A stretch of 64,000 bases of DNA from positions 20,088,001 through 20,152,000 of the forward strand of contig NC_086376.1 of assembly GCF_036588685.1 (NCBI RefSeq), given 5' to 3'. Below the pieces are notes generated by a model that saw only the letters and a list, made by a program, of their open reading frames with translations, was not told where the DNA came from and searched no databases. Position 1 is the stretch's first letter. Each line of letters opens with the position of its first letter. Origin of the DNA: Mytilus trossulus. Lineage: Eukaryota. Below, one piece after another: positions 30,801 through 62,044 of this stretch. A program made the position numbers and the translations under genes.

Positions 30801-33800
30801 TTTTAAAGGAAAAACACAAAAGATAATTGTTTTTAAGCCCTTTGATCTGAAACAACGAAACAATAAAATATAGGAATCAAAATATAGCAATCCACTATTA
30901 TAACCAAAACATGATAAAATTTATTCAACACACAGAAAAATAAATAGTCAGAATCTCACTTCATTATGAAAGAGGTCAATGAAACAAAGTATAGCAATAC
31001 ACTAACCAAAACATGATTAAGAGTTATTCAACGCTAAATAAAACGTTGACAAAATACCACTTTATTTAGAAAGGATTGTTATTATCTTTAACAATACGCT
31101 ATCCAAAACATGATTAAGATTTATTCAACACAAAAAAAAAATGCTGTCTCACTTTATTTTGAGACAATGACAACAATTATACTTATAAGAAAACACTTGC
31201 TTACAGAGTTATTAAACACAAAACCAATTAAGATTAGTTGCGAACATGTAGGGTGTGAAAGTGAAAGGGGGCGAACATGAGTTGGCGCAAACGTGAATGG
31301 GCGCGAACGGACCCGGATTCAGCCTATGTACCAGTGAGAAATATAGAAGCCTTTCTACGGTATTTATTTGTACAATTCAGGTAGTCTTGACCTATTCATT
31401 TGTCTTAAAAAAAAACCAGCCAGTTGGCACCTTCACTTCACACACACACATATACGAATATCAATTATATGCTTACGAGACATGTTGCATTGTTAAACTA
31501 ATTACGGTATGTGAAAATCAAGGCTTGCATAAAAACTATCCCAATATTAGAGACAGTGGCGTCATTTTTCTTCCGAGCTTTCAGCTCTTTGATTCTAAAC
31601 ATTCAGCAACATCTCAGATTCTTATGATTGTCTTGCTTTAAAAGGTAAAAACAAGCAAAACAATTGAACATAAACAACTTTCCTGTAATGTTTTACTCAT
31701 AATCTTCATGTGTGATATTTTCCTTGACTTATATGCGTGTTTGTAACAATACGGAAAATCAGAATTAAACAGTATTTATATTTAGTATTTTTATAAATTT
31801 AGAAACACGTCAGAGGGAATTCCCAAATTTTGATAACTTGCGAGAGTTCTCTGAAAGCCGATCGATAATTCTATTTCTGTCACAAGAACTGAAGAGGAGT
31901 ATTTCTATATTTTACCGTTAAGAAACTGATATTTGATACTGTACTCTCATAAAGAAATGCAGAACCATTCATCATATCATTTAATAAACGTTCTTGTTCC
32001 AAATCGCAAGTCGCGGATTGTTTATGTATTAATGCCCATGCGTGGTCTCACTAATTAGAGACAAAAAGAATTGTAGAGACAAAAAGCGTCAAGAAGCGAC
32101 AAGAAGAATAATATTAGCAACAAGAAACTATTTAGCGACAAGAAAACATTTTTTTATTTATATTACTTATTCGCATAAATATTAAAAACATATGCAAAAG
32201 AAAACAATTTCAACGACAGGAAAGTTGATTTTGATAGGGGAAAAAATGAAATTCAGTTGCTACATTTATTTACATGATATTTTATAAGGTATCACAGGAA
32301 GTATTACCTTTACCCAGTCGTTTTATGGTATTACTTTTACTTGTGTTTTAGAACAATAATATATTTTGTCTTTTTATTTGTTTTTAAAACTATTTTTGTA
32401 CAATATATACTTAACTTGCAAAATGCATTATTTGTGCATAATTGTCCAGAAAATACACACACAAATAGTGAAATACAAATTAAGAACTGAAATCAATCAA
32501 GAGGAAAAACCCTCTATTGAAAAACGCGCTAATGCAAGCTCAGTCCTTCTTGCCTTGGGCCAGTTTTAAACACATAATTAAGCATCCTTGAAATCACAAT
32601 ATGTTGTGATTTCAAGGATGCCTTTTTTTTTGTCTGAGCTGTTGTTACGGTAAACCGTGCGGACCTTCTTTTAATGTTACTTGATCAAATACGGTTACGT
32701 ATTGCGGTTACGGTAAACACATGTTAACGTTTGGTCTACATTCCTTCTTTAGGAATGGTACTTCTTGTTTTATCAATGAGACACTGCTAAGTGATTAAGA
32801 CTATTTGTTAGTCTAGTTTACCGTACCACCAAACAATCCTTTAACATTTCAGTTTCCCGTTTCTTTGTATTAAATGTTTGAGAAACAAGATAAGGATATT
32901 GATAGGTAAAGATTTCAGGGTTTCTGTCCATTGATATCGAAACATATCAGCCGCGAGCCAGAGAGTTTCACCTTGTGTCGAGCGACTGAACACCCAAAAT
33001 CTCTTATTTGTTCTTTCACTATGTTTGTGCTAGACAAACGTAGGCCTGACAACGTCTTGTGACGTCGCTGATAACTTCTCAAACACTATGACGTTGCTGA
33101 TATTATCTGCTCAGAGCAAAGACATTTCTAGGTAAACTAATTGTATGAGGGTACGGTAAACAAAGATGCAATACCAAAATAAAAGGACCCAGTATTATAC
33201 TTTATAGTCCAGTTTACCGTATCAGCATACATTTTTTTTTGTCTTCTGTGGAATTCATTTCTAATCCGAAACTCATTGAATAAATTGGAAGCAAATATCC
33301 CCTTGAACATTCAGACAGTGATTTAATTTCGTTTAGTTTGTTGTGGTTAACCTTCAGCGTGCGAAGAAACGGTAAACTGCAGAGTATACTTATACTAGTT
33401 GAGCTACGGTAAACCTTTAATAGAATTTTTATGGTTACGGTAAACATTGCAGTCACAAGCTATGGAAAAGTTTATGGTAACGGTAAACATATAAGAAAAA
33501 TGACTTAGAAATGTTAACCGTTTGCAAGAGTAGGTACCATTAATGAAAAGGGGAGCTATTTCCAAAAATGTACTATTTAATTATGTAAGGAAGCATTTAT
33601 TAAGACTTGTCTCCCCTTGAACATCAAGACATGGAAGAGGCCATATAGGCCGATTTACTATATAAGGCTTGCATTTCACTATTTGGGATCTTTATCACAT
33701 CACATCCACGCCAGTTTAAAATGGATTTTTTAATGAACAGTGGACTCTCAAATGTTGTAGCTCTTACTGAAGAAGTTTTCTCTGCCTCTAGCGAAATATT

Positions 33801-33943
33801 CGGTAAAGTTGCAATAAAGAAAGTCATCAAAACCTCAACTGAGTTTGAAGCTTTTCTCAGCCTCAAACACGAAAACATCGTCGAAGCCATTGAAATCATC
33901 GAAGCCGAAGAATTTGCCTTCGTTTTGATGGAATTTGCTGAAT

Positions 33944-36900
33944 GGGCTATTCCAGAAATAATCCATACCCCCCCTATAGAAGGTACATGTGGTTTGGAAA
34001 AAAATCCATGGAAAATTTTTGATGTGGTTCAGAAAAAAATCTGGAATTCCATGTCAGTCCTATAGAAGGCAAATAGATAAATAAAAATATTCCATGGAAA
34101 ATTATGATCTTGTTATTAAAAAATTTCTGGAAATCCAGAGCCATCCTATAGAAGGCAACTATAAAAGTTTAAAAATTCCATGGAAAATCTGGATTTTGTC
34201 ACTTTCAGTAAAATCTAATTTTTGAGCTTGTATGTATATCTGTAGTTCATTAGGTAATAATAAAGTCCAATATGTATCTTTACAAACAATGTATCAGTAT
34301 GTGGTATAGCTTTTTGCACATTGTTGAAGGCTGTATGATATTCTTAAGTTGTTAAAATATATCTTTTGATCTCTGTTGGGGAGTTAGTCCAAATAATTTT
34401 GATGTCTAGGAGAGCTATTTTAAGTTTTTGCTTTGACGCCTCCCCACACATCAAAGTAAGATCAAAAGAAGTGAAAATTGAAAAATACCCACAGGAGACG
34501 GCATGATTATCTGGACCTATAGTGAAGAGTTGTCTTATTGGCAATTTGGAAATGATACCACCTTTTATTATTTTCATACTACATCCATACATGTTGTAAG
34601 CCAGAGTTACCAGTACTGAACTTCAGTCTGAGATTTGTAAATTTGAAATCGTTTGCAAAAGGACCTAAAAAGAAGTGAAATGTGAACATTTGTTATGTAC
34701 GTGTACCTCAGATACTAACATAACATTCAGGGGATAAACATGTAGATGTTGATAGTGATAATACTTCAAAGAGATGCCTACTTCCAACACCACATGACAT
34801 GTTTGATAGTTTATTGGGGCATTTCTTAAGTACTTATTGGAGAGATAATAAATATTTTCCCATCTTTTCTTTTACCATGGAAGTTTAATAGATCTTCAAG
34901 TGAATTTAAATTGATATGAATACTGTCATTACTGTGTATTTTATAATTCATTCATGACAAAAATAATAATTTTAATAATTCTTTATTGAAAAGCACTTTA
35001 TGCCCATATGGACCAATGGCTTAAAACATTATACAGTTTACATAAAACAATGAAAATAAACAATGGAGACACTTTGAACTATAATTTGTCTTTTTTCAAA
35101 TCAATATATATATATATATAAGAGATTCAAATTATATCAAGGACTCCCTGCCCTCAGTCTTAGTGACTTTTTTTTTTAAAAAGGAGCCTAATTTGCAAGT
35201 GTCCTGTTTTGTTTCAGGATTGAGGATATGTTTTAATTTATCTAAATAATATTTTTTTTTTATCAACATGATAAATGGTTCTAACATCCAAATTTCACTT
35301 ATAATACTTAAAATTTTCATGTTTTATGGGTTTTTTTTATCATAAAGGAGTCATAATTCAATGCAGCTATAAGGGTAATGATAAAAAAACAACCATACTC
35401 AGTGGCGGGTCCAAATATTTTCATAAGTGGGGGTCCACTGACTGCCTAAGAAGGGACCCGCTCCAGTCACGCTTCAGTGATTCCCTTTATAAGCAAACAA
35501 TATTTTCCCAAAAGGGGGAGGGCATTGCCCCCTGCCCCCCCTAAATCCGCCTCTGATACCAAGAAATGAAGAATCAAAAGAAATGACATAGTAAATATAC
35601 TGGATGTTAAATATCAAATCAAGATTTTTGCAACTATTTACAAGTCAGTGTTTAAAAAAAATAACATAGTTCATTATCTGGATTTACAGGGTTTTATTTA
35701 TGTTCTCTACAAGATGTTTGTATTGAAATTTGTGAGAAACCACACACCAGGACACTGCAGGACCTACTGCTTTTCTTAGTTGTTGAGGTTGAAGATTATT
35801 TTATCTAGCCATTCAGTTGACTAACAATCAGTAGTACAAGCTTGATGAAATCCCACTGTGACCACATGGCCATTTCTGTGGATTTTAATTAATTATAAAA
35901 TGATATATATACTACATGTAATTATTTGAACTACATGTTATAAGACAAATGAGATTAAAACTAGGAATTATGTATCCACAATCCCTTGCTCTGCAAAAAT
36001 AAATATTAAGTCTCAGTTTTAAAATTATAAAAGTTTATTTGTTTATTAATATTAAAGTTGTTTCATTTATTTATCAATTATTATTATACATTGACTCTAT
36101 ATTGTCATTTGATGATCATTACAAATTGTTGAAGTGGATTAACATGATAACATCTATTATTTGAATATGTTTTGATTATAAACATAATGTATCATCTTTC
36201 ATTTCCATTATAACTTTTTTCAACTTTAAACATGTAAAAAATAAAAATGTCATTATTATACAAATTTAGAATTTAACAATTGTTTAAAAGTTTTGAAATT
36301 TTCTTTAATTTCATGATGTTTTAAAATGTAAAGAAATACAGGGATTTGGAAACAATAAGAATTTGTATAAATACGTTACCCAATGAAGGAGTGTTATGTC
36401 TAGATTTGGTGACTAGTTGCAGGCGACAAATAGCAAATCATAAAACTATGTACAGGAAATATTAAAAATGTCAAATTTTGGTTAGAGCAAGAACTTTATA
36501 TGAGATTAGAGACACATTTGTAATGAATTGTGAACTACTTTATATTTTTTTAAAACTTGTGTTGAATTTTTGATGGTTCATTTATATTTGGAGAAAACTT
36601 TTTCAAAGTGTGGCAGTGATACAAGAACATTAAATTTGATAACTTCTCAAATTTCATTCCAGTATACAATTTTATTTTAGAAATTCAGCCATTTCTTATG
36701 CAAATTTATATTGAACATTTTATAATATAGATATAAAGACAAAATACAAACTAAACACAAATTTTATTTTTCGAAAAAAAAAAGGAAAAAAAAAGGGGGG
36801 ATGTCTGGAGCTTATTAAATTCAAACCTCAGAAGATTTTGCCACTAGCTGATTTTGATATGAATGTATTTATGTGGAACAATACTTTTACACTATGTAGA

Positions 36901-39132
36901 ACACATGTGGTCATTTCTGGTCAGTCATCTAAGATCTATTGTGGTAATCGGAAGATTTCATGCAGTGATGACAAATAAACAAGTGTTTGAAATTAATGAT
37001 TTGTCAATAAGACGTTAATTGGTTATTGATACTGAAGGAACTCAAAATCTGGTGTTTATCATGTTTATAGCTTGAAAATCAGAGCAGATAGCATTTTATC
37101 CTAACAATAGATATTAGAAAAATGATAAGTTCAATGTCATTATAGGCACCAATAATGATTTAAATCATCGTTATAAATATGATAGTGAATTCACAATAAA
37201 ACTATAAGAAGAAAAAAATATCTCCTTACTTTAAGCCAATGTAAAACATTTGGTCATAATGGAATTATTTTGAGATGTAAATACCTTTTCAATTTTTAAA
37301 AGGCTTTGTTTCATTCTTGGAAAAGTTTTCTTTTTCTTTTATGAAGTCAAGTTTACATGTACAAGTATGTAAATTTGCATTTCAAATATCTGAATTGAGA
37401 ACTATCATGTTTAAGAATTGATTTTCAAAATATGTTTACCTACCCTGATATACACTATCTTTTTCGGGTAATTTATACTGATAGCGTTTGACATTTTCAG
37501 CTGAACAAATTTATCAATTTTACATAACTTAAATTATTGTATGCTGGTTCATATTCTGGACGCCAATCTTTGCTCCTTTTTGGAAATTAGTATGGCGTTC
37601 ATTATCACTGAACTAGTATATATTTGTTTAGGGGCCAGCTGAAGGACGCCTCCGGGTGCCGGAATTTCTCGCTACATTGAAGACCTGTTGGTGACCTTCT
37701 GCTGTTGTTTTTTTATTTGGTCGGTGTGTTGTCTCTTTGACCCATTCCCCATTTCCATTCTCAATTTTATTAGAAAAATATATCAAACTTGATGATTTCT
37801 TTTTTTGTGATTCCAGTACACAAACAAAAATAATTAAAAGAAATGAAAATTTGTAAAAAAAATCAATTAATATTGTCATTTATGCCTTATTTATTCATAT
37901 ATCTCAACTGTGTTTGTAATATGCTTTAAATTACACTAAAATAGAAAACAAACTATCCAACTTTAGAATTCCCTTGTAAATGGTGTAGTAACAGTTTGTA
38001 ACGTGATCAAAACAGCAGACAGCTTGTGTTGCATTCCCAAATAGCAATAAGGTTTATTGACTGTTAAAGATGAGAAATAATCATTAATACCGTTTAAGAT
38101 GATATAAGCATACAAAAACACAAGCTCTTTAAGTTATGATCTTTTAAGTCAACCCCTCAACTTTAAAACAATGTCATGAATGAGTTGGTGTAAACAAGAA
38201 GATGTGGTAAGAGTATCAATGAGACTACTCACAACCCAAATCACAGCGTATACAAAGTTAACAATCATAGATCAAAAACATGGAGCCTTGGCTCACACCA
38301 AACAACAAGTTATAAAGGGCCCTAAAAATAACTGAAAACCCAACTGTTGAATCAATATGAAAAAACAGAAACCAGAAACACCTATGGACATGTTACTACA
38401 CCAACAAATGACAACCATTTAACAATGGCATCTGATCAAGGACAGGTGCATACAAAAAATGCAGCATTTTAAACATAATATAACAGGAGCCAATCTTCAC
38501 CTCCACTTGAGACTGTAATGTAACATTACATTATAAAAAGACCCACTATAAATTATCAATTGAAATGGATGAACTTGATCACAAAGAAATTTTAACAAGA
38601 ACTAGTATTAAGCATACAGCTGCCATTTATGCATACACTGAATGAATGCCAGTTTGATTTAATCATCTACATGTGAGCTGCGGAACCTTAGCTCTTAGGT
38701 CCTTATGTTATTTATCATTTGACCATAGATCTGCAAATAGTCAAGAAATAACATAAGGATCTAAGAGCTACGGTTCCTCAACTATCTACATGTATGACAC
38801 AATAATCAATATAAACAATATTAAAACTTATATGTTTCATGTAAATATTTAGTTGGAAAATTTCTGTTGGAAGTTAAATTTGCCTGGAAATTTTCTTTTG
38901 GAAGTTAAATTTGCCTGGAAATATTTAATTGAACCAGATATTTTCTTGGAAGTTTTAGTATTATTCTCATTTTTTTCCTGGAATAATTCTTACAAATTGT
39001 TGAAAAATTCTGGAAATTATTGCCAACTAAGAGAATATTTTCTGGAAAATCTGATATTTTTACAGATTTTTTATCTGGAATTCCTAAACCTTCTATAGGG
39101 GGGGGGGGTATGGATTATTTCTGGAATAGCCC
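33944..39132. mobile_element. 5.2-kb non-autonomous TIR transposon, PIF/Harbinger (PHIS)-like
   Basis: TIR GGGCTATTCCAGAAATAATCCATACCCCCCC-TATAGAAGG and inverse; 3-bp AAT TSD, verified against the empty site in sister units; subterminal TGGAA repeats. Confidence 0.88.
38671..38783. mobile_element. Palindromic mini-MITE inside the 5.2-kb element
   Basis: Inverted arms GGAACC.TAGCTCTTAG.TCCTTATGTTATTT; ATCTACATGT on both sides. Confidence 0.65.
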
Positions 39133-39273
39133 AATTCGGAGATGTTTTTGAATACATAATGAACAACGGTCTCATGTCCGTTGAAGCCACCCTCTCTCTT
39201 TTCTCTCAGGTTGTCAAAGCAATCGAATACTGCCACTCAATTGGAATCGCCCACAATGACATTAAATTAGAAA

Positions 39274-40856
39274 GGCACTGGCTACGATTACATGGAAATG
39301 TAACAATAATAAAAATATTATTGTTACATAGGAGACTAAATGCCGGAATGCAAAGGCGGATAAGGAACCGATTAATTACGAATGTAACAATAATTACTGA
39401 GGCTACGGTTACATGGCGTTATTGTTACATGAAAAACAGCAATCATTAAACTTAAATCTTGCCGGTATAGTTTTGTTGCCTTAATCTTGCATATGTACGA
39501 AATAATACTTGTAACAATGATAAATAATAAATATTATCGTTAACGAATGGTGTTTAAATTTTTTTTCTAACGTATAAATGGTTTTGGTGTTTTAAAGATA
39601 CTACTTAAGGATGTTCGCTGCTCAGTTTCATAATAAATAACTTTTCATAAAACTTGTATGTATTGGTAGGGAATAAATTTAGGGATCAAAATAGCAAAAT
39701 AAAATATAGGGGTCCATGTGCTTGTTTTCGAGATATTAGCCATTGGAATTTTGGCGGGAAAATGTTCTCTCTTGATTTTTCATAGCTTTATCATTGACCA
39801 GTTAAAGTTCTCAAATACTATTATAAAATAAATAAAATTTTATAAGACTTTAACAAATGACTTATAATTATACATGTAAAAGATTTATAAAAAGAAAAAT
39901 GGGGGTTCATGGGGATTTTTTTTTAATTATTCAAATGGATAAAACCAGAGGATTCCAAAAATCTGACAAAAATTCCGAAACATGACAAGCAGACATCCTT
40001 AAGATAAGTAGTGCCAAAGGCGAAAATATAGACCAATGGTTTGTTGTTGAGAACTCGGGCTGAGAAAAGTGTTCACTTTAAGTATTTTAAAACTGCACAT
40101 CTACTCGTATTACTGTCATTATACAATGCACAATGGATGAAGAGATTCTTGTGACCAATTTTGTTGTGGGTGAAAAATTTAAAACTTGGGATTCGTTTGA
40201 AACAAAACTGAAACAATATCAAGACACAAATTTCATTCAGCTATACAAACGCAGTTCTAAAAAAAATTAACGGACGGCAATGTGACCATACTGAAAGATG
40301 ACATAAAACTACATCACATGCTTCCAACCAAAATATTAGATGAGAACATAAACATTGCTCGAGTGAAAAAGTATTTCCACCGGAAGCATGGCAAACATTA
40401 AAGGTCGCATTATCATCAAAAAGGGATATCGCAGAATGGAACTGTACAGTATGTGATACGGACGTTCACAGTGCGGCATCACTGGTGTGTGATGGCTGCT
40501 TGGAGTGGTTTCACCAAAAATGTGTCGGACTCAGAAATGCTCCAAAAACCACTTACTGGATATGTAGAAAATGTCATTGCAAATAAATAATTAAAGAATT
40601 TATATTTAATAATTGTATGTATTGTAAATATAAAATAAATGTCTTTAATTTTTATTATCTAGTACATTTTAATAGACCCATTGTATATTGCTGTTTTTCA
40701 TGTAACAATAACGCCATGTAACCGTAGCCTCAGTAATTATTGTTACATTCGTAATTAATCGGTTCCTTACCCGACCTTGCATTCCGTCATTTAGTCTCCT
40801 ATGTAACAATAATATTTTTATTATTGTTACATTTCCATGTAACCGTAGCCAGTGCC
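39274..40856 (+). mobile_element. Internally deleted Mutator-like element (MULE) with transposase remnant and PHD finger
   Basis: ~170-bp TIRs starting GGCACTGGCTACG; 9-bp TSD AATTAGAAA; remnants MDEEIL..VGEKFKTWDSFETKLKQY (40133) and a C4HC3 motif (40437-40586). Confidence 0.9.
39609..39998. mobile_element. Kolobok-like MITE nested in the MULE
   Basis: TTAA|GGATGT...ACATCC|TTAA. Confidence 0.65.
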
Positions 40857-42396
40857 AATTAGAAAACGTCTTGTTGTCTAATGGTTGTGTCAAATTGGCC
40901 GACTTTGGATTTGCCAAGTCGTCCGATATTGTTGCCGAATCTGAAGAATTTTGTGGAACCCTCCTCCCATACGCTGCCCCAGAAGTTATTATGGGAATGG
41001 AACACAGCACCATGAAAGCAGATATGTGGAGTATGGGAGTTATGCTCTACGTCATGCTCTTCGGAGCTTTCCCATTCTCCGATAGTGACGCTACCTCTAT
41101 GGTCCAATCTCAAATCTCAAACACCCTCTTTTTCCCAGAAAACACTAACGAAACGTTAAAGTCTCTCATCTCCTCTATGCTTGAACCCTCTATTGAAAAA
41201 CGCGCTAATGCAAGCTCAGTCCTTCTTGCCTTGAGCCAGTTTTAAACACATAATTAAGCATCCTTGAAATCACAATATGTTGTGATTTCAAGGATGCCTT
41301 TTTTTTTGTCTGAGCTGTTGTTACGGTAAACCGTGCGGACCTTCTTTTAATGTTACTTGATCAAATACGGTTACGTATTGCGGTTACGGTAAACACATGT
41401 TAACGTTTGGTCTACATTCCTTCTTTAGGAATGGTACTTCTTGTTTTATCAATGAGACACTGCTAAGTGATTAAGACTATTTGTTAGTCTAGTTTACCGT
41501 ACCACCAAACAATCCTTTAACATTTCAGTTTCCCGTTTCTTTGTATTAAATGTTTGAGAAACAAGATAAGGATATTGATAGGTAAAGATTTCAGGGTTTC
41601 TGTCCATTGATATCGAAACATATCAGCCGCGAGCCAGAGAGTTTCACCTTGTGTCGAGCGACTGAACACCCATAATCTCTTATTCGTTCTTTCACTATGT
41701 TTGTGCTAGACAAACGTAGGCCTGACAACGTCTTGTGACGTCGCTGATAACTTCTCAAACACTATGACGTTGCTGATATTATCTGCTCAGAGCAAAGACA
41801 TTTCTAGGTAAACTAATTGTATGAGGGTACGGTAAACAAAGATGCAATACCAAAATAAAAGGACCCAGTATTATACTTTATAGTCCAGTTTACCGTATCA
41901 GCATACATTTTTTTTTGTCTTCTGTGGAATTCATTTCTAATCCGAAACTCATTGAATAAATTGGAAGCAAATATCCCCTTGAACATTCAGACAGTGATTT
42001 AATTTCGTTTAGTTTGTTGTGGTTAACCTTCAGCGTGCGAAGAAACGGTAAACTGCAGAGTATACTTATACTAGTTGAGCTACGGTAAACCTTTAATAGA
42101 ATTTTTATGGTTACGGTAAACATTGCAGTCACAAGCTATGGAAAAGTTTATGGTAACGGTAAACATATAAGAAAAATGACTTAGAAATGTTAACCGTTTG
42201 CAAGAGTAGGTACTATTAATGAAAAGGGGAGCTATTTCCAAAAATGTACTATTTAATTATGTAAGGAAGCATTTATTAAGACTTGTCTCCCCTTGAACAT
42301 CAAGACATGGAAGAGGCCATATCGGTCGATTTACTATATAAGGCTTGCATTTCACTATTTGGGATCTTTATCACATCACATCCACGCCAGTTTAAA

Positions 42397-46917: not shown

Positions 46918-46929
46918 ACACATAATTAA

Positions 46930-46979
46930 GCATCCTTGAAATCACAATATGTTGTGATTTCAAGGATGCCTTTTTTTTT
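46930..46979 (+). terminator. 18-bp perfect hairpin + T9 after the kinase stop (representative; one per spacer); function unproven
   Basis: GCATCCTTGAAATCACAA-tatg-TTGTGATTTCAAGGATGC-c-TTTTTTTTT, starting 12 nt after TAA. Confidence 0.55.
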
Positions 46980-48006: not shown

Positions 48007-48013
48007 TATATAA
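48007..48013 (+). promoter_or_regulatory. TATA box of the kinase unit (representative; present in all 12)
   Basis: cTATATAAgg ~62 bp upstream of ATG, Inr-like TCACATC ~35 bp downstream of it. Confidence 0.7.
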
Positions 48014-48068
48014 GGCTTGCATTTCACTATTTGGGATCTTTATCACATCACATCCACGCCAGTTTAAA

Positions 48069-51838: not shown

Positions 51839-52576
51839 ATGGATTTTTTAATGAACAGTGGACTCTCAAATGTTGTAGCTCTTACTGAAGAAGTTTTCTC
51901 TGCCTCTAGCGAAATATTCGGTAAAGTTGCAATAAAGAAAGTCATCAAAACCTCAACTGAGTTTGAAGCTTTTCTCAGCCTCAAACACGAAAACATCGTC
52001 GAAGCCATTGAAATCATCGAAGCCGAAGAATTTGCCTTCGTTTTGATGGAATTTGCTGAATTCGGAGATGTTTTTGAATACATAATGAACAACGGTCTCA
52101 TGTCCGTTGAAGCCACCCTCTCTCTTTTCTCTCAGGTTGTCAAAGCAATCGAATACTGCCACTCAATTGGAATCGCCCACAATGACATTAAATTAGAAAA
52201 CGTCTTGTTGTCTAATGGTTGTGTCAAATTGGCCGACTTTGGATTTGCCAAGTCGTCCGATATTGTTGCCGAATCTGAAGAATTTTGTGGAACCCTCCCA
52301 TACGCTGCCCCAGAAGTTATTATGGGAATGGAACACAGCACCATGAAAGCCGATATGTGGAGTATGGGAGTTATGCTCTACGTCATGCTCTTCGGAGCTT
52401 TCCCATTCTCCGATAGTGACGCTACCTCTATGGTCCAATCTCAAATCTCAAACACCCTCTTTTTCCCAGAAAACACTAACGAAACGTTAAAGTCTCTCAT
52501 CTCCTCTATGCTTGAACCCTCTATTGAAAAACGCGCTAATGCAAGCTCAGTCCTTCTTGCCTTGAGCCAGTTTTAA
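51839..52576 (+). CDS. Intronless TSSK-like kinase copy 7
   Basis: Intact 245-aa ORF. Confidence 0.88.
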   Translation: MDFLMNSGLSNVVALTEEVFSASSEIFGKVAIKKVIKTSTEFEAFLSLKHENIVEAIEIIEAEEFAFVLMEFAEFGDVFEYIMNNGLMSVEATLSLFSQVVKAIEYCHSIGIAHNDIKLENVLLSNGCVKLADFGFAKSSDIVAESEEFCGTLPYAAPEVIMGMEHSTMKADMWSMGVMLYVMLFGAFPFSDSDATSMVQSQISNTLFFPENTNETLKSLISSMLEPSIEKRANASSVLLALSQF

Positions 52577-53727
52577 ACACATAATTAAGCATCCTTGAAA
52601 TCACAATATGTTGTGATTTCAAGGATGCCTTTTTTTTTGTCTGAGCTGTTGTTACGGTAAACCGTGCGGACCTTCTTTTAATGTTACTTGATCAAATACG
52701 GTTACGTATTGCGGTTACGGTAAACACATGTTAACGTTTGGTCTACATTCCTTCTTTAGGAATGGTACTTCTTGTTTTATCAATGAGACACTGCTAAGTG
52801 ATTAAGACTATTTGTTAGTCTAGTTTACCGTACCACCAAACAATCCTTTAACATTTCAGTTTCCCGTTTCTTTGTATTAAATGTTTGAGAAACAAGATAA
52901 GGATATTGATAGGTAAAGATTTCAGGGTTTCTGTCCATTGATATCGAAACATATCAGCCGCGAGCCAGAGAGTTTCACCTTGTGTCGAGCGACTGAACAC
53001 CCATAATCTCTTATTCGTTCTTTCACTATGTTTGTGCTAGACAAACGTAGGCCTGACAACGTCTTGTGACGTCGCTGATAACTTCTCAAACACTATGACG
53101 TTGCTGATATTATCTGCTCAGAGCAAAGACATTTCTAGGTAAACTAATTGTATGAGGGTACGGTAAACAAAGATGCAATACCAAAATAAAAGGACCCAGT
53201 ATTATACTTTATAGTCCAGTTTACCGTATCAGCATACAGTTTTTTTTGTCTTCTGTGGAATTCATTTCTAATCCGAAACTCATTGAATAAATTGGAAGCA
53301 AATATCCCCTTGAACATTCAGACAGTGATTTAATTTCGTTTAGTTTGTTGTGGTTAACCTTCAGCGTGCGAAGAAACGGTAAACTGCAGAGTATACTTAT
53401 ACTAGTTGAGCTACGGTAAACCTTTAATAGAATTTTTATGGTTACGGTAAACATTGCAGTCACAAGCTATGGAAAAGTTTATGGTAACGGTAAACATATA
53501 AGAAAAATGACTTAGAAATGTTAACCGTTTGCCAGAGTAGGTACCATTAATGAAAAGGGGGGCTATTTCCAAAAATGTACTATTTAATTATGTAAGGAAG
53601 CATTTATTAAGACTTGTCTCCCCTTGAACATCAAGACATGGAAGAGGCCATATCGGCCGATTTACTATATAAGGCTTGCATTTCACTATTTGGGATCTTT
53701 ATCACATCACATCCACGCCAGTTTAAA

Positions 53728-54465
53728 ATGGATTTTTTAATGAACAGTGGACTCTCAAATGTTGTAGCTCTTACTGAAGAAGTTTTCTCTGCCTCTAGCG
53801 AAATATTCGGTAAAGTTGCAATAAAGAAAGTCATCAAAACCTCAACTGAGTTTGAAGCTTTTCTCAGCCTCAAACACGAAAACATCGTCGAAGCCATTGA
53901 AATCATCGAAGCCGAAGAATTTGCCTTCGTTTTGATGGAATTTGCTGAATTCGGAGATGTTTTTGAATACATAATGAACAACGGTCTCATGTCCGTTGAA
54001 GCCACCCTCTCTCTTTTCTCTCAGGTTGTCAAAGCAATCGAATACTGCCACTCAATTGGAATCGCCCACAATGACATTAAATTAGAAAACGTCTTGTTGT
54101 CTAATGGTTGTGTCAAATTGGCCGACTTTGGATTTGCCAAGTCGTCCGATATTGTTGCCGAATCTGAAGAATTTTGTGGAACCCTCCCATACGCTGCCCC
54201 AGAAGTTATTATGAGAATGGAACACAGCACCATGAAAGCCGATATGTGGAGTATGGGAGTTATGCTCTACGTCATGCTCTTCGGAGCTTTCCCATTCTCC
54301 GATAGTGACGCTACCTCTATGGTCCAATCTCAAATCTCAAACACCCTCTTTTTCCCAGAAAACACTAACGAAACGTTAAAGTCTCTCATCTCCTCTATGC
54401 TTGAACCCTCTATTGAAAAACGCGCTAATGCAAGCTCAGTCCTTCTTGCCTTGAGCCAGTTTTAA
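53728..54465 (+). CDS. Intronless TSSK-like kinase copy 8 (G>R after APE)
   Basis: Intact ORF; EVIMRMEH instead of EVIMGMEH. Confidence 0.86.
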   Translation: MDFLMNSGLSNVVALTEEVFSASSEIFGKVAIKKVIKTSTEFEAFLSLKHENIVEAIEIIEAEEFAFVLMEFAEFGDVFEYIMNNGLMSVEATLSLFSQVVKAIEYCHSIGIAHNDIKLENVLLSNGCVKLADFGFAKSSDIVAESEEFCGTLPYAAPEVIMRMEHSTMKADMWSMGVMLYVMLFGAFPFSDSDATSMVQSQISNTLFFPENTNETLKSLISSMLEPSIEKRANASSVLLALSQF

Positions 54466-55616
54466 ACACATAATTAAGCATCCTTGAAATCACAATATGT
54501 TGTGATTTCAAGGATGCCTTTTTTTTTGTCTGAGCTGTTGTTACGGTAAACCGTGCGGACCTTCTTTTAATGTTACTTGATCAAATACGGTTACGTATTG
54601 CGGTTACGGTAAACACATGTTAACGTTTGGTCTACATTCCTTCTTTAGGAATGGTACTTCTTGTTTTATCAATGAGACACTGCTAAGTGATTAAGACTAT
54701 TTGTTAGTCTAGTTTACCGTACCACCAAACAATCCTTTAACATTTCAGTTTCCCGTTTCTTTGTATTAAATGTTTGAGAAACAAGATAAGGATATTGATA
54801 GGTAAAGATTTCAGGGTTTCTGTCCATTGATATCGAAACATATCAGCCGCGAGCCAGAGAGTTTCACCTTGTGTCGAGCGACTGAACACCCATAATCTCT
54901 TATTCGTTCTTTCACTATGTTTGTGCTAGACAAACGTAGGCCTGACAACGTCTTGTGACGTCGCTGATAACTTCTCAAACACTATGACGTTGCTGATATT
55001 ATCTGCTCAGAGCAAAGACATTTCTAGGTAAACTAATTGTATGAGGGTACGGTAAACAAAGATGCAATACCAAAATAAAAGGACCCAGTATTATACTTTA
55101 TAGTCCAGTTTACCGTATCAGCATACAGTTTTTTTTGTCTTCTGTGGAATTCATTTCTAATCCGAAACTCATTGAATAAATTGGAAGCAAATATCCCCTT
55201 GAACATTCAGACAGTGATTTAATTTCGTTTAGTTTGTTGTGGTTAACCTTCAGCGTGCGAAGAAACGGTAAACTGCAGAGTATACTTATACTAGTTGAGC
55301 TACGGTAAACCTTTAATAGAATTTTTATGGTTACGGTAAACATTGCAGTCACAAGCTATGGAAAAGTTTATGGTAACGGTAAACATATAAGAAAAATGAC
55401 TTAGAAATGTTAACCGTTTGCAAGAGTAGGTACCATTAATGAAAAGGGGAGCTATTTCCAAAAATGTACTATTTAATTATGTAAGGAAGCATTTATTAAG
55501 ACTTGTCTCCCCTTGAACATCAAGACATGGAAGAGGCCATATCGGCCGATTTACTATATAAGGCTTGCATTTCACTATTTGGGATCTTTATCACATCACA
55601 TCCACGCCAGTTTAAA

Positions 55617-56354
55617 ATGGATTTTTTAATGAACAGTGGACTCTCAAATGTTGTAGCTCTTACTGAAGAAGTTTTCTCTGCCTCTAGCGAAATATTCGGT
55701 AAAGTTGCAATAAAGAAAGTCATCAAAACCTCAACTGAGTTTGAAGCTTTTCTCAGCCTCAAACACGAAAACATCGTCGAAGCCATTGAAATCATTGAAG
55801 CCGAAGAATTTGCCTTCGTTTTGATGGAATTTGCTGAATTCGGAGATGTTTTTGAATACATAATGAACAACGGTCTCATGTCCGTTGAAGCCACCCTCTC
55901 TCTTTTCTCTCAGGTTGTCAAAGCAATCGAATACTGCCACTCAATTGGAATCGCCCACAATGACATTAAATTAGAAAACGTCTTGTTGTCTAATGGTTGT
56001 GTCAAATTGGCCGACTTTGGATTTGCCAAGTCGTCCGATATTGTTGCCGAATCTGAAGAATTTTGTGGAACCCTCCCATACGCTGCCCCAGAAGTTATTA
56101 TGGGAATGGAACACAGCACCATGAAAGCCGATATGTGGAGTATGGGAGTAATGCTCTACGTCATGCTCTTCGGAGCTTTCCCATTCTCCGATAGTGACGC
56201 TACCTCTATGGTCCAATCTCAAATCTCAAACACCCTCTTTTTCCCAGAAAACACTAACGAAACGTTAAAGTCTCTCATCTCCTCTATGCTTGAACCCTCT
56301 ATTGAAAAACGCGCTAATGCAAGCTCAGTCCTTCTTGCCTTGAGCCAGTTTTAA
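55617..56354 (+). CDS. Intronless TSSK-like kinase copy 9
   Basis: Intact ORF; two synonymous changes seen. Confidence 0.88.
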   Translation: MDFLMNSGLSNVVALTEEVFSASSEIFGKVAIKKVIKTSTEFEAFLSLKHENIVEAIEIIEAEEFAFVLMEFAEFGDVFEYIMNNGLMSVEATLSLFSQVVKAIEYCHSIGIAHNDIKLENVLLSNGCVKLADFGFAKSSDIVAESEEFCGTLPYAAPEVIMGMEHSTMKADMWSMGVMLYVMLFGAFPFSDSDATSMVQSQISNTLFFPENTNETLKSLISSMLEPSIEKRANASSVLLALSQF

Positions 56355-57505
56355 ACACATAATTAAGCATCCTTGAAATCACAATATGTTGTGATTTCAA
56401 GGATGCCTTTTTTTTTGTCTGAGCTGTTGTTACGGTAAACCGTGCGGACCTTCTTTTAATGTTACTTGATCAAATACGGTTACGTATTGCGGTTACGGTA
56501 AACACATGTTAACGTTTGGTCTACATTCCTTCTTTAGGAATGGTACTTCTTGTTTTATCAATGAGACACTGCTAAGTGATTAAGACTATTTGTTAGTCTA
56601 GTTTACCGTACCACCAAACAATCCTTTAACATTTCAGTTTCCCGTTTCTTTGTATTAAATGTTTGAGAAACAAGATAAGGATATTGATAGGTAAAGATTT
56701 CAGGGTTTCTGTCCATTGATATCGAAACATATCAGCCGCGAGCCAGAGAGTTTCACCTTGTGTCGAGCGACTGAACACCCATAATCTCTTATTCGTTCTT
56801 TCACTATGTTTGTGCTAGACAAACGTAGGCCTGACAACGTCTTGTGACGTCGCTGATAACTTCTCAAACACTATGACGTTGCTGATATTATCTGCTCAGA
56901 GCAAAGACATTTCTAGGTAAACTAATTGTATGAGGGTACGGTAAACAAAGATGCAATACCAAAATAAAAGGACCCAGTATTATACTTTATAGTCCAGTTT
57001 ACCGTATCAGCATACAGTTTTTTTTGTCTTCTGTGGAATTCATTTCTAATCCGAAACTCATTGAATAAATTGGAAGCAAATATCCCCTTGAACATTCAGA
57101 CAGTGATTTAATTTCGTTTAGTTTGTTGTGGTTAACCTTCAGCGTGCGAAGAAACGGTAAACTGCAGAGTATACTTATACTAGTTGAGCTACGGTAAACC
57201 TTTAATAGAATTTTTATGGTTACGGTAAACATTGCAGTCACAAGCTATGGAAAAGTTTATGGTAACGGTAAACATATAAGAAAAATGACTTAGAAATGTT
57301 AACCGTTTGCAAGAGTAGGTACCATTAATGAAAAGGGGAGCTATTTCCAAAAATGTACTATTTAATTATGTAAGGAAGCATTTATTAAGACTTGTCTCCC
57401 CTTGAACATCAAGACATGGAAGAGGCCATATCGGCCGATTTACTATATAAGGCTTGCATTTCACTATTTGGGATCTTTATCACATCACATCCACGCCAGT
57501 TTAAA

Positions 57506-58243
57506 ATGGATTTTTTAATGAACAGTGGACTCTCAAATGTTGTAGCTCTTACTGAAGAAGTTTTCTCTGCCTCTAGCGAAATATTCGGTAAAGTTGCAAT
57601 AAAGAAAGTCATCAAAACCTCAACTGAGTTTGAAGCTTTTCTCAGCCTCAAACACGAAAACATCGTCGAAGCCATTGAAATCATCGAAGCCGAAGAATTT
57701 GCCTTCGTTTTGATGGAATTTGCTGAATTCGGAGATGTTTTTGAATACATAATGAACAACGGTCTCATGTCCGTTGAAGCCACCCTCTCTCTTTTCTCTC
57801 AGGTTGTCAAAGCAATCGAATACTGCCACTCAATTGGAATCGCCCACAATGACATTAAATTAGAAAACGTCTTGTTGTCTAATGGTTGTGTCAAATTGGC
57901 CGACTTTGGATTTGCCAAGTCGTCCGATATTGTTGCCGAATCTGAAGAATTTTGTGGAACCCTCCCATACGCTGCCCCAGAAGTTATTATGGGAATGGAA
58001 CACAGCACCATGAAAGCCGATATGTGGAGTATGGGAGTTATGCTCTACGTCATGCTCTTCGGAGCTTTCCCATTCTCCGATAGTGACGCTACCTCTATGG
58101 TCCAATCTCAAATCTCAAACACCCTCTTTTTCCCAGAAAACACTAACGAAACGTTAAAGTCTCTCATCTCCTCTATGCTTGAACCCTCTATTGAAAAACG
58201 CGCTAATGCAAGCTCAGTCCTTCTTGCCTTGAGCCAGTTTTAA
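57506..58243 (+). CDS. Intronless TSSK-like kinase copy 10
   Basis: Intact 245-aa ORF. Confidence 0.88.
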   Translation: MDFLMNSGLSNVVALTEEVFSASSEIFGKVAIKKVIKTSTEFEAFLSLKHENIVEAIEIIEAEEFAFVLMEFAEFGDVFEYIMNNGLMSVEATLSLFSQVVKAIEYCHSIGIAHNDIKLENVLLSNGCVKLADFGFAKSSDIVAESEEFCGTLPYAAPEVIMGMEHSTMKADMWSMGVMLYVMLFGAFPFSDSDATSMVQSQISNTLFFPENTNETLKSLISSMLEPSIEKRANASSVLLALSQF

Positions 58244-59393
58244 ACACATAATTAAGCATCCTTGAAATCACAATATGTTGTGATTTCAAGGATGCCTTTT
58301 TTTTGTCTGAGCTGTTGTTACGGTAAACCGTGCGGACCTTCTTTTAATGTTACTTGATCAAATACGGTTACGTATTGCGGTTACGGTAAACACATGTTAA
58401 CGTTTGGTCTACATTCCTTCTTTAGGAATGGTACTTCTTGTTTTATCAATGAGACACTGCTAAGTGATTAAGACTATTTGTTAGTCTAGTTTACCGTACC
58501 ACCAAACAATCCTTTAACATTTCAGTTTCCCGTTTCTTTGTATTAAATGTTTGAGAAACAAGATAAGGATATTGATAGGTAAAGATTTCAGGGTTTCTGT
58601 CCATTGATATCGAAACATATCAGCCGCGAGCCAGAGAGTTTCACCTTGTGTCGAGCGACTGAACACCCATAATCTCTTATTCGTTCTTTCACTATGTTTG
58701 TGCTAGACAAACGTAGGCCTGACAACGTCTTGTGACGTCGCTGATAACTTCTCAAACACTATGACGTTGCTGATATTATCTGCTCAGAGCAAAGACATTT
58801 CTAGGTAAACTAATTGTATGAGGGTACGGTAAACAAAGATGCAATACCAAAATAAAAGGACCCAGTATTATACTTTATAGTCCAGTTTACCGTATCAGCA
58901 TACATTTTTTTTTGTCTTCTGTGGAATTCATTTCTAATCCGAAACTCATTGAATAAATTGGAAGCAAATATCCCCTTGAACATTCAGACAGTGATTTAAT
59001 TTCGTTTAGTTTGTTGTGGTTAACCTTCAGCGTGCGAAGAAACGGTAAACTGCAGAGTATACTTATACTAGTTGAGCTACGGTAAACCTTTAATAGAATT
59101 TTTATGGTTACGGTAAACATTGCAGTCACAAGCTATGGAAAAGTTTATGGTAACGGTAAACATATAAGAAAAATGACTTAGAAATGTTAACCGTTTGCAA
59201 GAGTAGGTACCATTAATGAAAAGGGGAGCTATTTCCAAAAATGTACTATTTAATTATGTAAGGAAGCATTTATGAAGACTTGTCTCCCCTTGAACATCAA
59301 GACATGGAAGAGGCCATATCGGCCGATTTACTATATAAGGCTTGCATTTCACTATTTGGGATCTTTATCACATCACATCCACGCCAGTTTAAA

Positions 59394-60131
59394 ATGGATT
59401 TTTTAATGAACAGTGGACTCTCAAATGTTGTAGCTCTTACTGAAGAAGTTTTCTCTGCCTCTAGCGAAATATTCGGTAAAGTTGCAATAAAGAAAGTCAT
59501 CAAAACCTCAACTGAGTTTGAAGCTTTTCTCAGCCTCAAACACGAAAACATCGTCGAAGCCATTGAAATCATCGAAGCCGAAGAATTTGCCTTCGTTTTG
59601 ATGGAATTTGCTGAATTCGGAGATGTTTTTGAATACATAATGAACAACGGTCTCATGTCCGTTGAAGCCACCCTCTCTCTTTTCTCTCAGGTTGTCAAAG
59701 CAATCGAATACTGCCACTCAATTGGAATCGCCCACAATGACATTAAATTAGAAAACGTCTTGTTGTCTAATGGTTGTGTCAAATTGGCCGACTTTGGATT
59801 TGCCAAGTCGTCCGATATTGTTGCCGAATCTGAAGAATTTTGTGGAACCCTCCCATACGCTGCCCCAGAAGTTATTATGGGAATGGAACACAGCACCATG
59901 AAAGCCGATATGTGGAGTATGGGAGTTATGCTCTACGTCATGCTCTTCGGAGCTTTCCCATTCTCCGATAGTGACGCTACCTCTATGGTCCAATCTCAAA
60001 TCTCAAACACCCTCTTTTTCCCAGAAAACACTAACGAAACGTTAAAGTCTCTCATCTCCTCTATGCTTGAACCCTCTATTGAAAAACGCGCTAATGCAAG
60101 CTCAGTCCTTCTTGCCTTGAGCCAGTTTTAA
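59394..60131 (+). CDS. Intronless TSSK-like kinase copy 11
   Basis: Intact ORF; downstream hairpin shortened by a 19-bp deletion. Confidence 0.88.
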   Translation: MDFLMNSGLSNVVALTEEVFSASSEIFGKVAIKKVIKTSTEFEAFLSLKHENIVEAIEIIEAEEFAFVLMEFAEFGDVFEYIMNNGLMSVEATLSLFSQVVKAIEYCHSIGIAHNDIKLENVLLSNGCVKLADFGFAKSSDIVAESEEFCGTLPYAAPEVIMGMEHSTMKADMWSMGVMLYVMLFGAFPFSDSDATSMVQSQISNTLFFPENTNETLKSLISSMLEPSIEKRANASSVLLALSQF

Positions 60132-61263
60132 ACACATAATTAAGCATCCTTGTTTCAAGGATGCCTTTTTTTTTGTCTGAGCTGTTGTTACGGTAAACCG
60201 TGCGGACCTTCTTTTAATGTTACTTGATCAAATACGGTTACGTATTGCGGTTACGGTAAACACATGTTAACGTTTGGTCTACATTCCTTCTTTAGGAATG
60301 GTACTTCTTGTTTTATCAATGAGACACTGCTAAGTGATTAAGACTATTTGTTAGTCTAGTTTACCGTACCACCAAACAATCCTTTAACATTTCAGTTTCC
60401 CGTTTCTTTGTATTAAATGTTTGAGAAACAAGATAAGGATATTGATAGGTAAAGATTTCAGGGTTTCTGTCCATTGAAATCGAAACATATCAGCCGCGAG
60501 CCAGAGAGTTTCACCTTGTGTCGAGCGACTGAACACCCATAATCTCTTATTCGTTCTTTCACTATGTTTGTGCTAGACAAACGTAGGCCTGACAACGTCT
60601 TGTGACGTCGCTGATAACTTCTCAAACACTATGACGTTGCTGATATTATCTGCTCAGAGCAAAGACATTTCTAGGTAAACTAATTGTATGAGGGTACGGT
60701 AAACAAAGATGCAATACCAAAATAAAAGGACCCAGTATTATACTTTATAGTCCAGTTTACCGTATCAGCATACAGTTTTTTTTGTCTTCTGTGGAATTCA
60801 TTTCTAATCCGAAACTCATTGAATAAATTGGAAGCAAATATCCCCTTGAACATTCAGACAGTGATTTAATTTCGTTTAGTTTGTTGTGGTTAACCTTCAG
60901 CGTGCGAAGAAACGGTAAACTGCAGAGTATACTTATACTAGTTGAGCTACGGTAAACCTTTAATAGAATTTTTATGGTTACGGTAAACATTGCAGTCACA
61001 AGCTATGGAAAAGTTTATGGTAACGGTAAACATATAAGAAAAATGACTTAGAAATGTTAACCGTTTGCAAGAGTAGGTACCATTAATGAAAAGGGGAGCT
61101 ATTTCCAAAAATGTACTATTTAATTATGTAAGGAAGCATTTATTAAGACTTGTCTCCCCTTGAACATCAAGACATGGAAGAGGCCATATCGGCCGATTTA
61201 CTATATAAGGCTTGCATTTCACTATTTGGGATCTTTATCACATCACATCCACGCCAGTTTAAA

Positions 61264-61947
61264 ATGGATTTTTTAATGAACAGTGGACTCTCAAATGTTG
61301 TAGCTCTTACTGAAGAAGTTTTCTCTGCCTCTAGCGAAATATTCGTTAAAGTTGCAATAAAGAAAGTCATCAAAACCTCAACTGAGTTTGAAGCTTTTCT
61401 CAGCCTCAAACACGAAAACATCGTCGAAGCCATTGAAATCATCGAAGCCGAAGAATTTGCCTTCGTTTTGATGGAATTTGCTGAATTCGGAGATGTTTTT
61501 GAATACATAATGAACAACGGTCTCATGTCCGTTGAAGCCACCCTCTCTCTTTTCTCTCAGGTTGTCAAAGCAATCGAATACTGCCACTCAATTGGAATCG
61601 CCCACAATGACATTAAATTAGAAAACGTCTTGTTGTCTAATGGTTGTGTCAAATTGGCCGACTTTGGATTTGCCAAGTCGTCCGATATTGTTGCCGAATC
61701 TGAAGAATTTTGTGGAACCCTCCCATACGCTGCCCCAGAAGTTATTATGGGAATGGAACACAGCACCATGAAAGCCGATATGTGGAGTATGGGAGTTATG
61801 CTCCACGTCATGCTCTTCGGGGCTTTCCCATTCTCCGATAGTGACGCTACCTCTATGGTCCAATCTCAAATCTCAAACACCCTCTTTTTCCCAGAAATTT
61901 TAGTAATTAAAAATACTTTTAATTGGCCAAATCAAACAAGAAATTGA
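61264..61947 (+). pseudogene. Kinase copy 12, truncated at the array end (61897) and read through into flank
   Basis: Matches unit up to ...FFPE, then unrelated ILVIKNTF...; G>V and Y>H substitutions. Confidence 0.9.
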
Positions 61948-62044
61948 GAGAATTCAAGAATCGCGATGGCAAATATGTTGCAAACAAAATCATTTTTTTT
62001 TATTTTTTCTGTTACTGGGTTGTGGCAATAACCCCTCGATGTGA

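What the first reader, a model, noticed from the sequence alone, without database searches (positions are those of the whole stretch)
32508..61897. Array is circularly permuted: both ends break within the same 42 bp of the kinase ORF
The left end starts at AACCCTCTATTG (EPSIEK codons) and the right end stops at TTCCCAGAAA (FFPE). Only ACACTAACG...ATGCTTG (42 bp) lies between these points, so the array is 12 units minus 42 bp with no visible TSD. Local duplication of a resident gene should leave native flanks and an intact terminal gene. This geometry fits integration of a ~1.9-kb circle-derived multimer opened inside the ORF. A single opened monomer could not supply the 42 bp present in internal units, so at least a dimer was inserted (inference).
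Basis: partly seen in the sequence, partly recalled or inferred. Interest (0 to 1): 0.88.

Follow-up and report, generated by a model that had tools for sequence, protein, structure and literature searches.

The report
Transposed kinase-gene array with in-phase ends
A mussel chromosome carries a 12-copy tandem array of a small testis-type kinase gene that was evidently inserted here from elsewhere, and its two ends stop within the same 42 bp of the repeat, which is what re-insertion of a DNA circle would leave, although the circle is not proven.

Summary
The array (window 32508-61897, period 1889 bp) is a 116-bp partial unit, 11 units and a 1731-bp partial unit. It starts at unit phase 1774 and ends at phase 1731. 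The 42 bp between these points lie inside the kinase domain, are present in every internal unit, and are identical in a paralogous array. There is no TSD, and junction microhomology is 0-1 nt.

The array was not born here. Its left flank is a dispersed 1768-bp repeat broken at about position 1000, and the missing 768 bp is absent for 28 kb to the right. A roughly 30-unit array with the same period sits on C3 (2.5% substitutions apart) and has old degenerate kinase remnants at its edge. A 16-unit older array sits on C1. The C4 array has sharp ends and no remnants.

In-phase ends are the signature already proposed for eccDNA reintegration of Drosophila satellites. Random ends would give it with p of about 0.02-0.045. 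I put a once-opened circular multimer at about 0.5. The rivals are a linear fragment landing in phase by chance, or a fragment cut twice at a recurrent break site near phase 1730.

The exact donor is not in the assembly. The scan had already noted the C1 and C3 arrays elsewhere in this genome.

The parts
32508..61897 (+). Whole tandem array of the TSSK-like kinase cassette: 12 units minus 42 bp, period 1889 bp
32508..32623 (+). Left terminal partial unit (phase 1774-1889). It holds the last 20 codons, the stop codon, and the hairpin plus T run. It carries the C4-type bases at both diagnostic sites (1782, 1813).
32624..41299 (+). First full unit (u01). Its ORF is destroyed by two transposon insertions.
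33944..39132 (.). 5.2-kb non-autonomous DNA transposon with perfect 25-bp terminal inverted repeats and a 3-bp TSD (AAT). It inserted after the array was in place.
39274..40856 (.). 1.6-kb DNA transposon with about 25-bp terminal inverted repeats and a 9-bp TSD (AATTAGAAA).
41300..60166 (+). Units u02-u11. u02 (+4 bp) and u03 (+2 bp) are frameshifted. u04-u11 encode the intact 245-aa kinase.
60167..61897 (+). Right terminal partial unit (phase 1-1731). The kinase ORF is cut 34 codons before its stop.
48703..48744 (+). The 42 bp (phase 1732-1773) in the reference unit. It is present in all internal units, absent from both ends, and identical in the C3 array.
28050..28134 (+). First 85 bp of the left-flank dispersed repeat TE-L (full length 1768 bp).
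28135..31587 (.). 3.45-kb insertion inside TE-L. Seven bp of TE-L (positions 79-85) are duplicated on both sides.
31588..32507 (+). TE-L positions 79-1000, 98% identical to more than 40 other copies. It is broken at the array junction, and TE-L positions 1001-1768 are missing.
61898..62038 (+). 141-bp low-copy piece (E141). Its only paralogue, C12:48789411-48789522, begins its homology exactly at the array junction.
62039..64000 (+). Start of another dispersed element (TE-R). It also starts a roughly 12-kb segment that is repeated in tandem beyond the window.

Best explanation
The C4 array is a secondary, transposed copy of a tandemly repeated TSSK-like kinase cassette. The resident, older arrays lie on C3 (same 1.89-kb period) and C1. 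Most likely a circular multimer of at least two units was excised from a C3-type array by recombination between units, which gives exact multiples of the period. It was opened by one break inside the kinase ORF and lost about 42 bp at the ends. It was then ligated by end joining (0-1 nt microhomology, no TSD) between two broken chromosomal ends in transposon-rich DNA. One of those ends lay inside a TE-L copy. The array then changed in place: units were gained in the middle by unequal exchange, two DNA transposons entered unit 1, and frameshifts arose in units 2 and 3. Shown: the geometry, the foreign flanks, the paralogous arrays and the later changes. Inferred: the circular intermediate, the number of units inserted and the donor.
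For: The ends are in phase: 116 + 1731 = 1889 - 42. The 42 bp lies within the Pkinase match and is identical in C3 units, so the ends are not a founding duplication junction. The left flank is TE-L broken at about position 1000 of 1768, with the remainder absent for 28 kb. A roughly 30-unit array with period 1890 sits on C3, 98% identical in the ORF and 2.5% different overall, and has 79-93% identical scrambled remnants at its right edge. C1 has 74-80% remnants. C4 has none. All C4 units, including the 116-bp end piece, carry the C4-specific bases, so the inserted DNA was already of C4 type. Counted as substitution differences from the consensus-like unit u10, the edge units carry more (u01-u03: 5 each, u12: 4) than most central units (1-3, for example u05: 1, u11: 2). 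This fits growth in place after insertion. Junction microhomology is 0-1 nt. The same signature, truncated first and last repeats that together make one monomer, was put forward as a mark of eccDNA reintegration for Rsp-like satellite arrays (PMC7403614). A second permuted piece of this gene lies beside the C1 array: ref 1347-1730 joined at GAA to 1149-1295.
Against: No circle, empty allele or orthologous locus was seen. A random fragment of an array gives this geometry in 2-4.5% of cases, and the finding was picked because of the coincidence. Three independent breakpoints fall at phase 1724-1731 (C4 right end, C1 remnant, C3 right edge), so a fragile site could give in-phase ends on a linear fragment. 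The other two arrays are not near-integral: C1 is 15 units plus 1220 of 1711 bp, and C3 is short by 255 bp. No C4-type donor exists in the assembly. The homology of E141 to its C12 paralogue starts exactly at the junction, which may mean the right boundary is the edge of some other element or filler rather than plain target DNA.
Confidence: 0.5

Rival explanations
1. A linear multi-unit fragment of a donor array was inserted at a chromosomal break. The fragment was either released by two breaks or copied by break-induced or synthesis-dependent repair with template switching. The near-integral length is chance.
For: Every fact except the phase coincidence fits equally well: foreign flanks, a donor-type array on C3, and sharp ends. 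The chance is 0.023-0.045. C1 and C3 show non-integral lengths.
Against: It needs a 2-4% coincidence. Junction microhomology of 0-1 nt fits microhomology-driven template switching poorly. A second permuted kinase fragment at C1 would be a further coincidence.
Confidence: 0.2
2. A linear fragment was cut at the same fragile site, near phase 1730, in two different units of the donor array. One end was resected by 42 bp and the fragment was captured elsewhere. No circle is needed.
For: Three independent junctions lie at phase 1724-1731: the C4 right end (1731), the C1 remnant 1730|1149 joined at GAA, and the C3 edge 1006|1724-1730 joined at CCAAGA. A rough scan statistic for about 18 breakpoints gives p of about 0.04.
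Against: The two remnant junctions lie in old, 74-91% identical sequence. The clustering is only marginally significant. No obvious palindrome or other structure lies at the site. Free linear DNA is short-lived compared with circles.
Confidence: 0.13
3. The array arose or long resided at this C4 locus. Both ends were later eroded by independent deletions or rearrangements linked to transposon activity.
For: The region is a transposon nest. TE-L is also broken at another point by an insertion, and the left three units are decayed.
Against: It needs the same 2-4% coincidence plus two deletions. There are no degenerate kinase remnants around the array, unlike C3 and C1. The end units are as similar to the consensus as the others.
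Confidence: 0.07
4. The structure is an artefact of assembly or a product of transposon-mediated capture. Examples are a chimeric retrocopy made by template switching from the element that starts at 61898, or transduction.
For: E141 homology begins exactly at the junction, as a 5' terminus of an element would. The reads could not be inspected.
Against: The window has no gaps, and the joins are not within shared repeats, so an assembler would not create them. TE-L is broken internally rather than at a terminus. The remainder of any element continuing from E141 is not found within 28 kb. The unit contains 1 kb of spacer, so it is not an mRNA copy.
Confidence: 0.08

Closest known systems
Rsp-like satellite arrays newly inserted on the Drosophila simulans and D. 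mauritiana X chromosome (Sproul et al. 2020, PMC7403614)
   Same: [quoted passage not shown] The authors read this as possible reintegration of an eccDNA formed by intra-array exchange. Junctions show end-joining features, followed by local expansion by unequal exchange.
   Different: Those are short non-coding satellites that insert into another satellite, often at 4-7 bp microhomologies, and the circles were shown physically. Here the unit is a 1.89-kb protein-coding cassette in a mussel, 42 bp are lost, microhomology is 0-1 nt, and there are no circle data.
Interchromosomal duplications through circular intermediates in mammals: cattle colour-sidedness KIT translocations (abstract of PMC12235870) and human duplications (PMC7188851; PMC7450558)
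   Same: A chromosomal segment is circularised, cut at a new point and reinserted on another chromosome, which leaves a permuted copy.
   Different: In those cases the segment is single-copy, so the permutation itself proves the circle. In a tandem array the permutation is uninformative and only the integral length speaks.
Spread of Cast satellites in Tribolium castaneum by eccDNA or transposons (PMC11610590)
   Same: Arrays are dispersed to many loci in bursts, and eccDNA is proposed as the vehicle.
   Different: Array ends there showed no regular pattern, and no gene is carried.
Ordinary in-situ tandem gene arrays kept alike by unequal crossing-over, such as the C3 and C1 arrays of this same family
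   Same: The same cassette and the same homogenisation, with central units more alike than edge units.
   Different: The resident arrays are bordered by old degenerate kinase fragments. The C4 array has clean ends in foreign DNA.

Membership tests
Array derived from reintegrated eccDNA (signature as in PMC7403614) | [quoted passage not shown] | tested here: met
   116 bp + 1731 bp = 1889 - 42
Array derived from reintegrated eccDNA (signature as in PMC7403614) | A donor array of the same repeat exists elsewhere in the genome | tested here: inconclusive
   The C3 array has the same period but differs by 2.5% substitutions plus indels. No C4-type unit exists outside the window.
Array derived from reintegrated eccDNA (signature as in PMC7403614) | End-joining junctions in unrelated DNA, with no target-site duplication | tested here: met
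   0-1 nt microhomology and no TSD. The left flank is an internally broken TE-L.
Array derived from reintegrated eccDNA (signature as in PMC7403614) | An empty site in another allele or species | not testable with these tools
No second haplotig of the flanks exists in the assembly. Paralogous TE-L copies show that 768 bp of target is missing.
Array derived from reintegrated eccDNA (signature as in PMC7403614) | Circles made of multiples of the unit are physically present | not testable with these tools
   This needs Circle-seq or 2D gels.
Array born by local tandem duplication | Array ends coincide with the novel junction between units, and the flanks are native | tested here: not met
   The ends fall in authentic, conserved kinase coding sequence, and the flanks are a broken transposon and an unrelated 141-bp piece.
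Transposon-mediated capture or transduction (Helitron, LINE, composite transposon) | The array abuts transposon termini in the expected orientation | tested here: inconclusive
   On the left this is not met, because TE-L is broken at about position 1000 of 1768. On the right, E141 homology starts exactly at the junction, but its nature is unknown.
TSSK-type protein kinase (cargo gene) | A protein kinase domain with its closest named relatives being TSSKs | tested here: met
   Pfam Pkinase E = 5e-51. The best named hits are TSSK and testis-specific serine/threonine kinase 3-like of Mytilus. Catalytic competence was not assessed here.

The most novel reading that the evidence does not exclude
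The kinase cassette is a gene amplicon that repeatedly moves between chromosomes as circular DNA in the germline. The evidence that does not exclude this: three arrays on three chromosomes, each with its left end inside the ORF; a circularly permuted monomer fragment beside the C1 array; and a recurrent break site near phase 1730. The conserved spacer features (nine ACGGTAAAC motifs, and a perfect hairpin followed by a T run) could then act as cis elements for excision, maintenance or reinsertion.
Probability: 0.12. Interest if true: 0.8.

Novelty: new member of a known kind. Interest (0 to 1): 0.5.

Why it matters
Germline reintegration of eccDNA is widely proposed as the way tandem repeats colonise new loci, but it is rarely supported by a clean junction geometry. 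It is almost never shown for an array of intact protein-coding genes. This locus offers a defined case that could be tested by PCR in a species group known for large gene presence/absence variation: two unique junctions, a candidate parental array, and a 1.89-kb unit. If confirmed, it would show that circles can seed a new multi-copy locus of a testis-type kinase on another chromosome.

Tried and rejected
1. The flanks as an insertion into a longer array, or a higher-order repeat. Rejected: unit phase 1-209 occurs only 12 times on C4, and E141 is unique apart from one copy on C12.
2. A simple insertion into an intact TE-L with the rest of TE-L on the right. Rejected: TE-L 1001-1768 is absent for 28 kb, and only a different, 73-87% identical copy appears at 88.2-89.4 kb of the extended sequence.
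3. The present C3 array as direct donor. Rejected: 45 substitutions per unit plus about 97 gap columns separate them, and the C4-specific bases are already present in the 116-bp end piece.
4. A Helitron, rolling-circle transposon or CRESS-like replicon. No Rep gene is present, the ends are not at the hairpin, and the only credible ORF is the kinase.
5. A retrocopy of an mRNA. Rejected because the unit carries about 1 kb of spacer.
6. TE-R copies as the LTR pair of one element. Dropped because the duplication runs for about 12 kb in tandem.
The first whole-unit genome search missed the C3 array because only 37 of 112 candidates were scored.
8. Literature searches found no paper on Mytilus TSSK arrays or Mytilus eccDNA.
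Full report
**What is there**

The window is G000:C4:20088001-20152000 of a 1.3-Gb, AT-rich animal genome. The cargo protein's best named relatives are Mytilus TSSK proteins. A 97% identical protein named for Mytilus trossulus lies on a contig whose length equals that of C3. The genome is therefore a mussel, probably M. trossulus.

One unit (window 46972-48860, 1889 bp) was compared with the window by BLAST. The result is a 116-bp piece at 32508-32623 (phase 1774-1889), then eleven units, then a last unit at 60167-61897 covering phase 1-1731. The first full unit is split by insertions at 33944-39132 and 39274-40856. Both have perfect terminal inverted repeats and target-site duplications (AAT and AATTAGAAA) and no long ORF. 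They are DNA transposons that arrived after the array.

Each unit holds one credible ORF, a 245-aa kinase (Pfam Pkinase, E = 5e-51).

**The observation**

The sequence missing from both ends is phase 1732-1773, which is 42 bp or 14 codons, inside the Pkinase match. It is present in all eleven internal copies and is base-for-base identical in the C3 array. It is therefore real coding sequence, not junction filler.

The flanks share no direct repeat. Comparison with other copies of the left-flank repeat allows at most 1 nt of overlap on the left and none that can be determined on the right.

With random ends, a deficit of 0-42 bp has probability 43/1889 = 0.023, or 0.045 two-sided.

**The flanks**

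The 920 bp to the left (31588-32507) are 98% identical to more than 40 dispersed copies. Aligning nine of these copies with their flanks shows a 1768-bp element, TE-L:
- The window holds TE-L positions 1-85 at 28050-28134.
- It holds positions 79-1000 at 31588-32507.
- These two parts are separated by a 3.45-kb insertion with a 7-bp duplication.
- TE-L stops dead at the array, and positions 1001-1768 are not found in the 28 kb to the right.
- A deletion subfamily of TE-L has its breakpoint 7 bp from this point.

On the right, 61898-62038 (E141) has a single paralogue, on C12:
- The paralogue is 96% identical, and its homology begins exactly at the array junction.
- In C12 the sequence upstream is unique, and a dispersed repeat begins right after the homologous stretch.
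- I could not decide whether E141 is old local DNA, the terminus of a rare element, or templated filler.

From 62039 another dispersed element starts. It also opens a roughly 12-kb segment that is repeated in tandem beyond the window.

The array therefore lies between two unrelated pieces of DNA. A simple empty site joining 32507 to 61898 is not expected.

**Relatives**

A first whole-unit search found a 16-unit array on C1: period 1711-1726, 85% identical, beginning at ref about 1164 and ending at phase 1666 of its own 1711-bp unit. That search missed a larger array because only part of the candidates were scored.

A short query then revealed about 30 units on C3:16307993-16364953, minus strand, with period 1890. 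Sampled C3 units differ from each other by 1-4 substitutions and from C4 units by about 45 substitutions (2.5%) plus about 97 gap columns. The ORF is 98% identical in DNA and 97% in protein.

The homogeneous C3 array runs from phase about 1262 (with a 45-bp internal deletion) to phase 1006. It is followed by scrambled kinase fragments of 79-93% identity. C1 also has 74-80% identical fragments downstream. C4 has none. A Mytilus coruscus protein is 96% identical to the C1 type and only 88-90% to the C3 and C4 types, so the C1 type is older than that species split.

C3 and C1 therefore look like long-standing homes of the cassette, and C4 looks like a later arrival. The three arrays have different flanks and different end phases.

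**History inside the C4 array**

Units differ by 1-9 substitutions, mostly singletons. Measured against the consensus-like unit u10, the edge units carry more substitution differences (u01-u03: 5 each, u12: 4) than most central units (1-3, for example u05: 1, u11: 2). A few derived variants are shared:
- Position 386 is shared by u01, u03 and u05.
- Positions 903 and 931 are shared by u06 and u08.
- Position 609 is shared by u04-u10 and u12.

The ORFs of u01, u02 and u03 are broken, and u04-u11 are intact. This is the pattern of an array that has grown and been homogenised in its middle after it was in place.

The 116-bp end piece cannot be replaced by unequal exchange, yet it already has the C4-type base at both diagnostic sites. 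The inserted DNA was therefore of C4 type. No C4-type unit exists elsewhere in the assembly. The donor is missing: it may be another haplotype, a lost array, or an introgressed one.

**Mechanism**

The ends fall in authentic ORF and the flanks are foreign, so local birth by duplication is excluded as the origin of these ends. What remains is insertion of a piece of an array.

Any such piece looks circularly permuted. The only discriminating fact is that its length is an exact multiple of the unit minus 42 bp. A circle excised by recombination between units is an exact multiple. One break plus a little resection gives exactly this geometry, and blunt junctions fit end joining.

Sproul et al. 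describe this same signature for new Rsp-like satellite arrays and read it as possible eccDNA reintegration (PMC7403614). Similar circle-mediated duplications are reported in Tribolium, cattle and humans.

Several points count against the circle:
- A random fragment gives the pattern in 2-4.5% of cases.
- The finding was selected for the coincidence.
- C1 and C3 are not near-integral.
- Three independent junctions fall at phase 1724-1731: the C4 right end, the C1 remnant 1730|1149 joined at GAA, and the C3 edge 1006|1724-1730 joined at CCAAGA. A fragile site cut in two units could therefore release a linear fragment with in-phase ends.

One observation leans slightly towards circles. The C1 remnant, ref 1347-1730 followed directly by 1149-1295, is itself a permuted 582-bp segment lacking 51 bp. 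It is old, however, and other routes to it exist.

Weighing these, I put the circular intermediate at about 0.5, a chance linear fragment at 0.2, a fragile-site linear fragment at 0.13, in-situ erosion at 0.07, and artefact or transposon capture at 0.08.

**Limits**

No orthologous locus, empty allele or read support for the junctions could be examined.

**Verdict**

It is a new example, carrying genes and found in a mollusc, of a signature already described for satellites. Earlier notes of this scan had already recorded the C1 and C3 arrays. I confirmed both independently.

Noticed in passing
G000:C3:16307993-16364953 (loci L053-L056): A roughly 30-unit array of the same cassette, period 1890, minus strand. 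Its units are 99.8-99.95% alike. The right edge is followed by scrambled 79-93% identical kinase fragments. One unit carries an extra piece of about 660 bp near 16360-16362 kb.
   Followed up: partly
G000:C1:26029794-26030231 (loci L018, L022): Beside the C1 array lies an old kinase remnant in permuted order: ref 1347-1730 joined at a GAA microhomology directly to ref 1149-1295. This is a 582-bp segment opened within a 51-bp gap, the same geometry as the finding at monomer scale.
   Followed up: partly
unit phase 1724-1731 (e.g. window 48695-48702); L054; L018: Three independent rearrangement junctions in three arrays fall within 8 bp of each other at ...CCCAGAA(A). This may be a recurrent break site. 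A rough scan-statistic gives p of about 0.04.
   Followed up: partly
window 32500-32507 and loci L034, L036, L037: The point where TE-L is broken by the array lies 7 bp from the breakpoint of a 473-bp internal deletion that defines a TE-L subfamily. This TE-L position may be break-prone.
   Followed up: no
window 33944-39132 and 39274-40856: Two young non-autonomous DNA transposons with perfect terminal inverted repeats (3-bp and 9-bp TSDs). Both sit inside the kinase ORF of the first unit and in none of the other units.
   Followed up: partly
window 41300-45082: Units 2 and 3 carry frameshifts (+4 bp at phase 1349, +2 bp at phase 1745). All three leftmost ORFs are therefore dead, while the eight units u04-u11 are intact.
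   Followed up: yes
window 32647-61031: The 9-mer ACGGTAAAC occurs exactly nine times per spacer, in both orientations. That is 108 times in the array and never elsewhere in the window, against 0.23 expected.
   Followed up: partly
window 60153-60166 region (unit u11, phase 1857-1875): Unit 11 has a 19-bp deletion that removes half of the perfect hairpin following the stop codon in every other unit.
   Followed up: no
window 62039-64000 and beyond (L051, L042, L057, L058): A roughly 12-kb segment starting exactly at 62039 is repeated in tandem (62039-74022 and 74023 to about 86000 in extended coordinates), 97-99% alike. It contains satellite blocks related to those at window 3161-5412.
   Followed up: partly
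whole genome G000: No C4-type unit exists outside the window although the array was evidently imported, so the donor array is missing from this assembly.
   Followed up: partly
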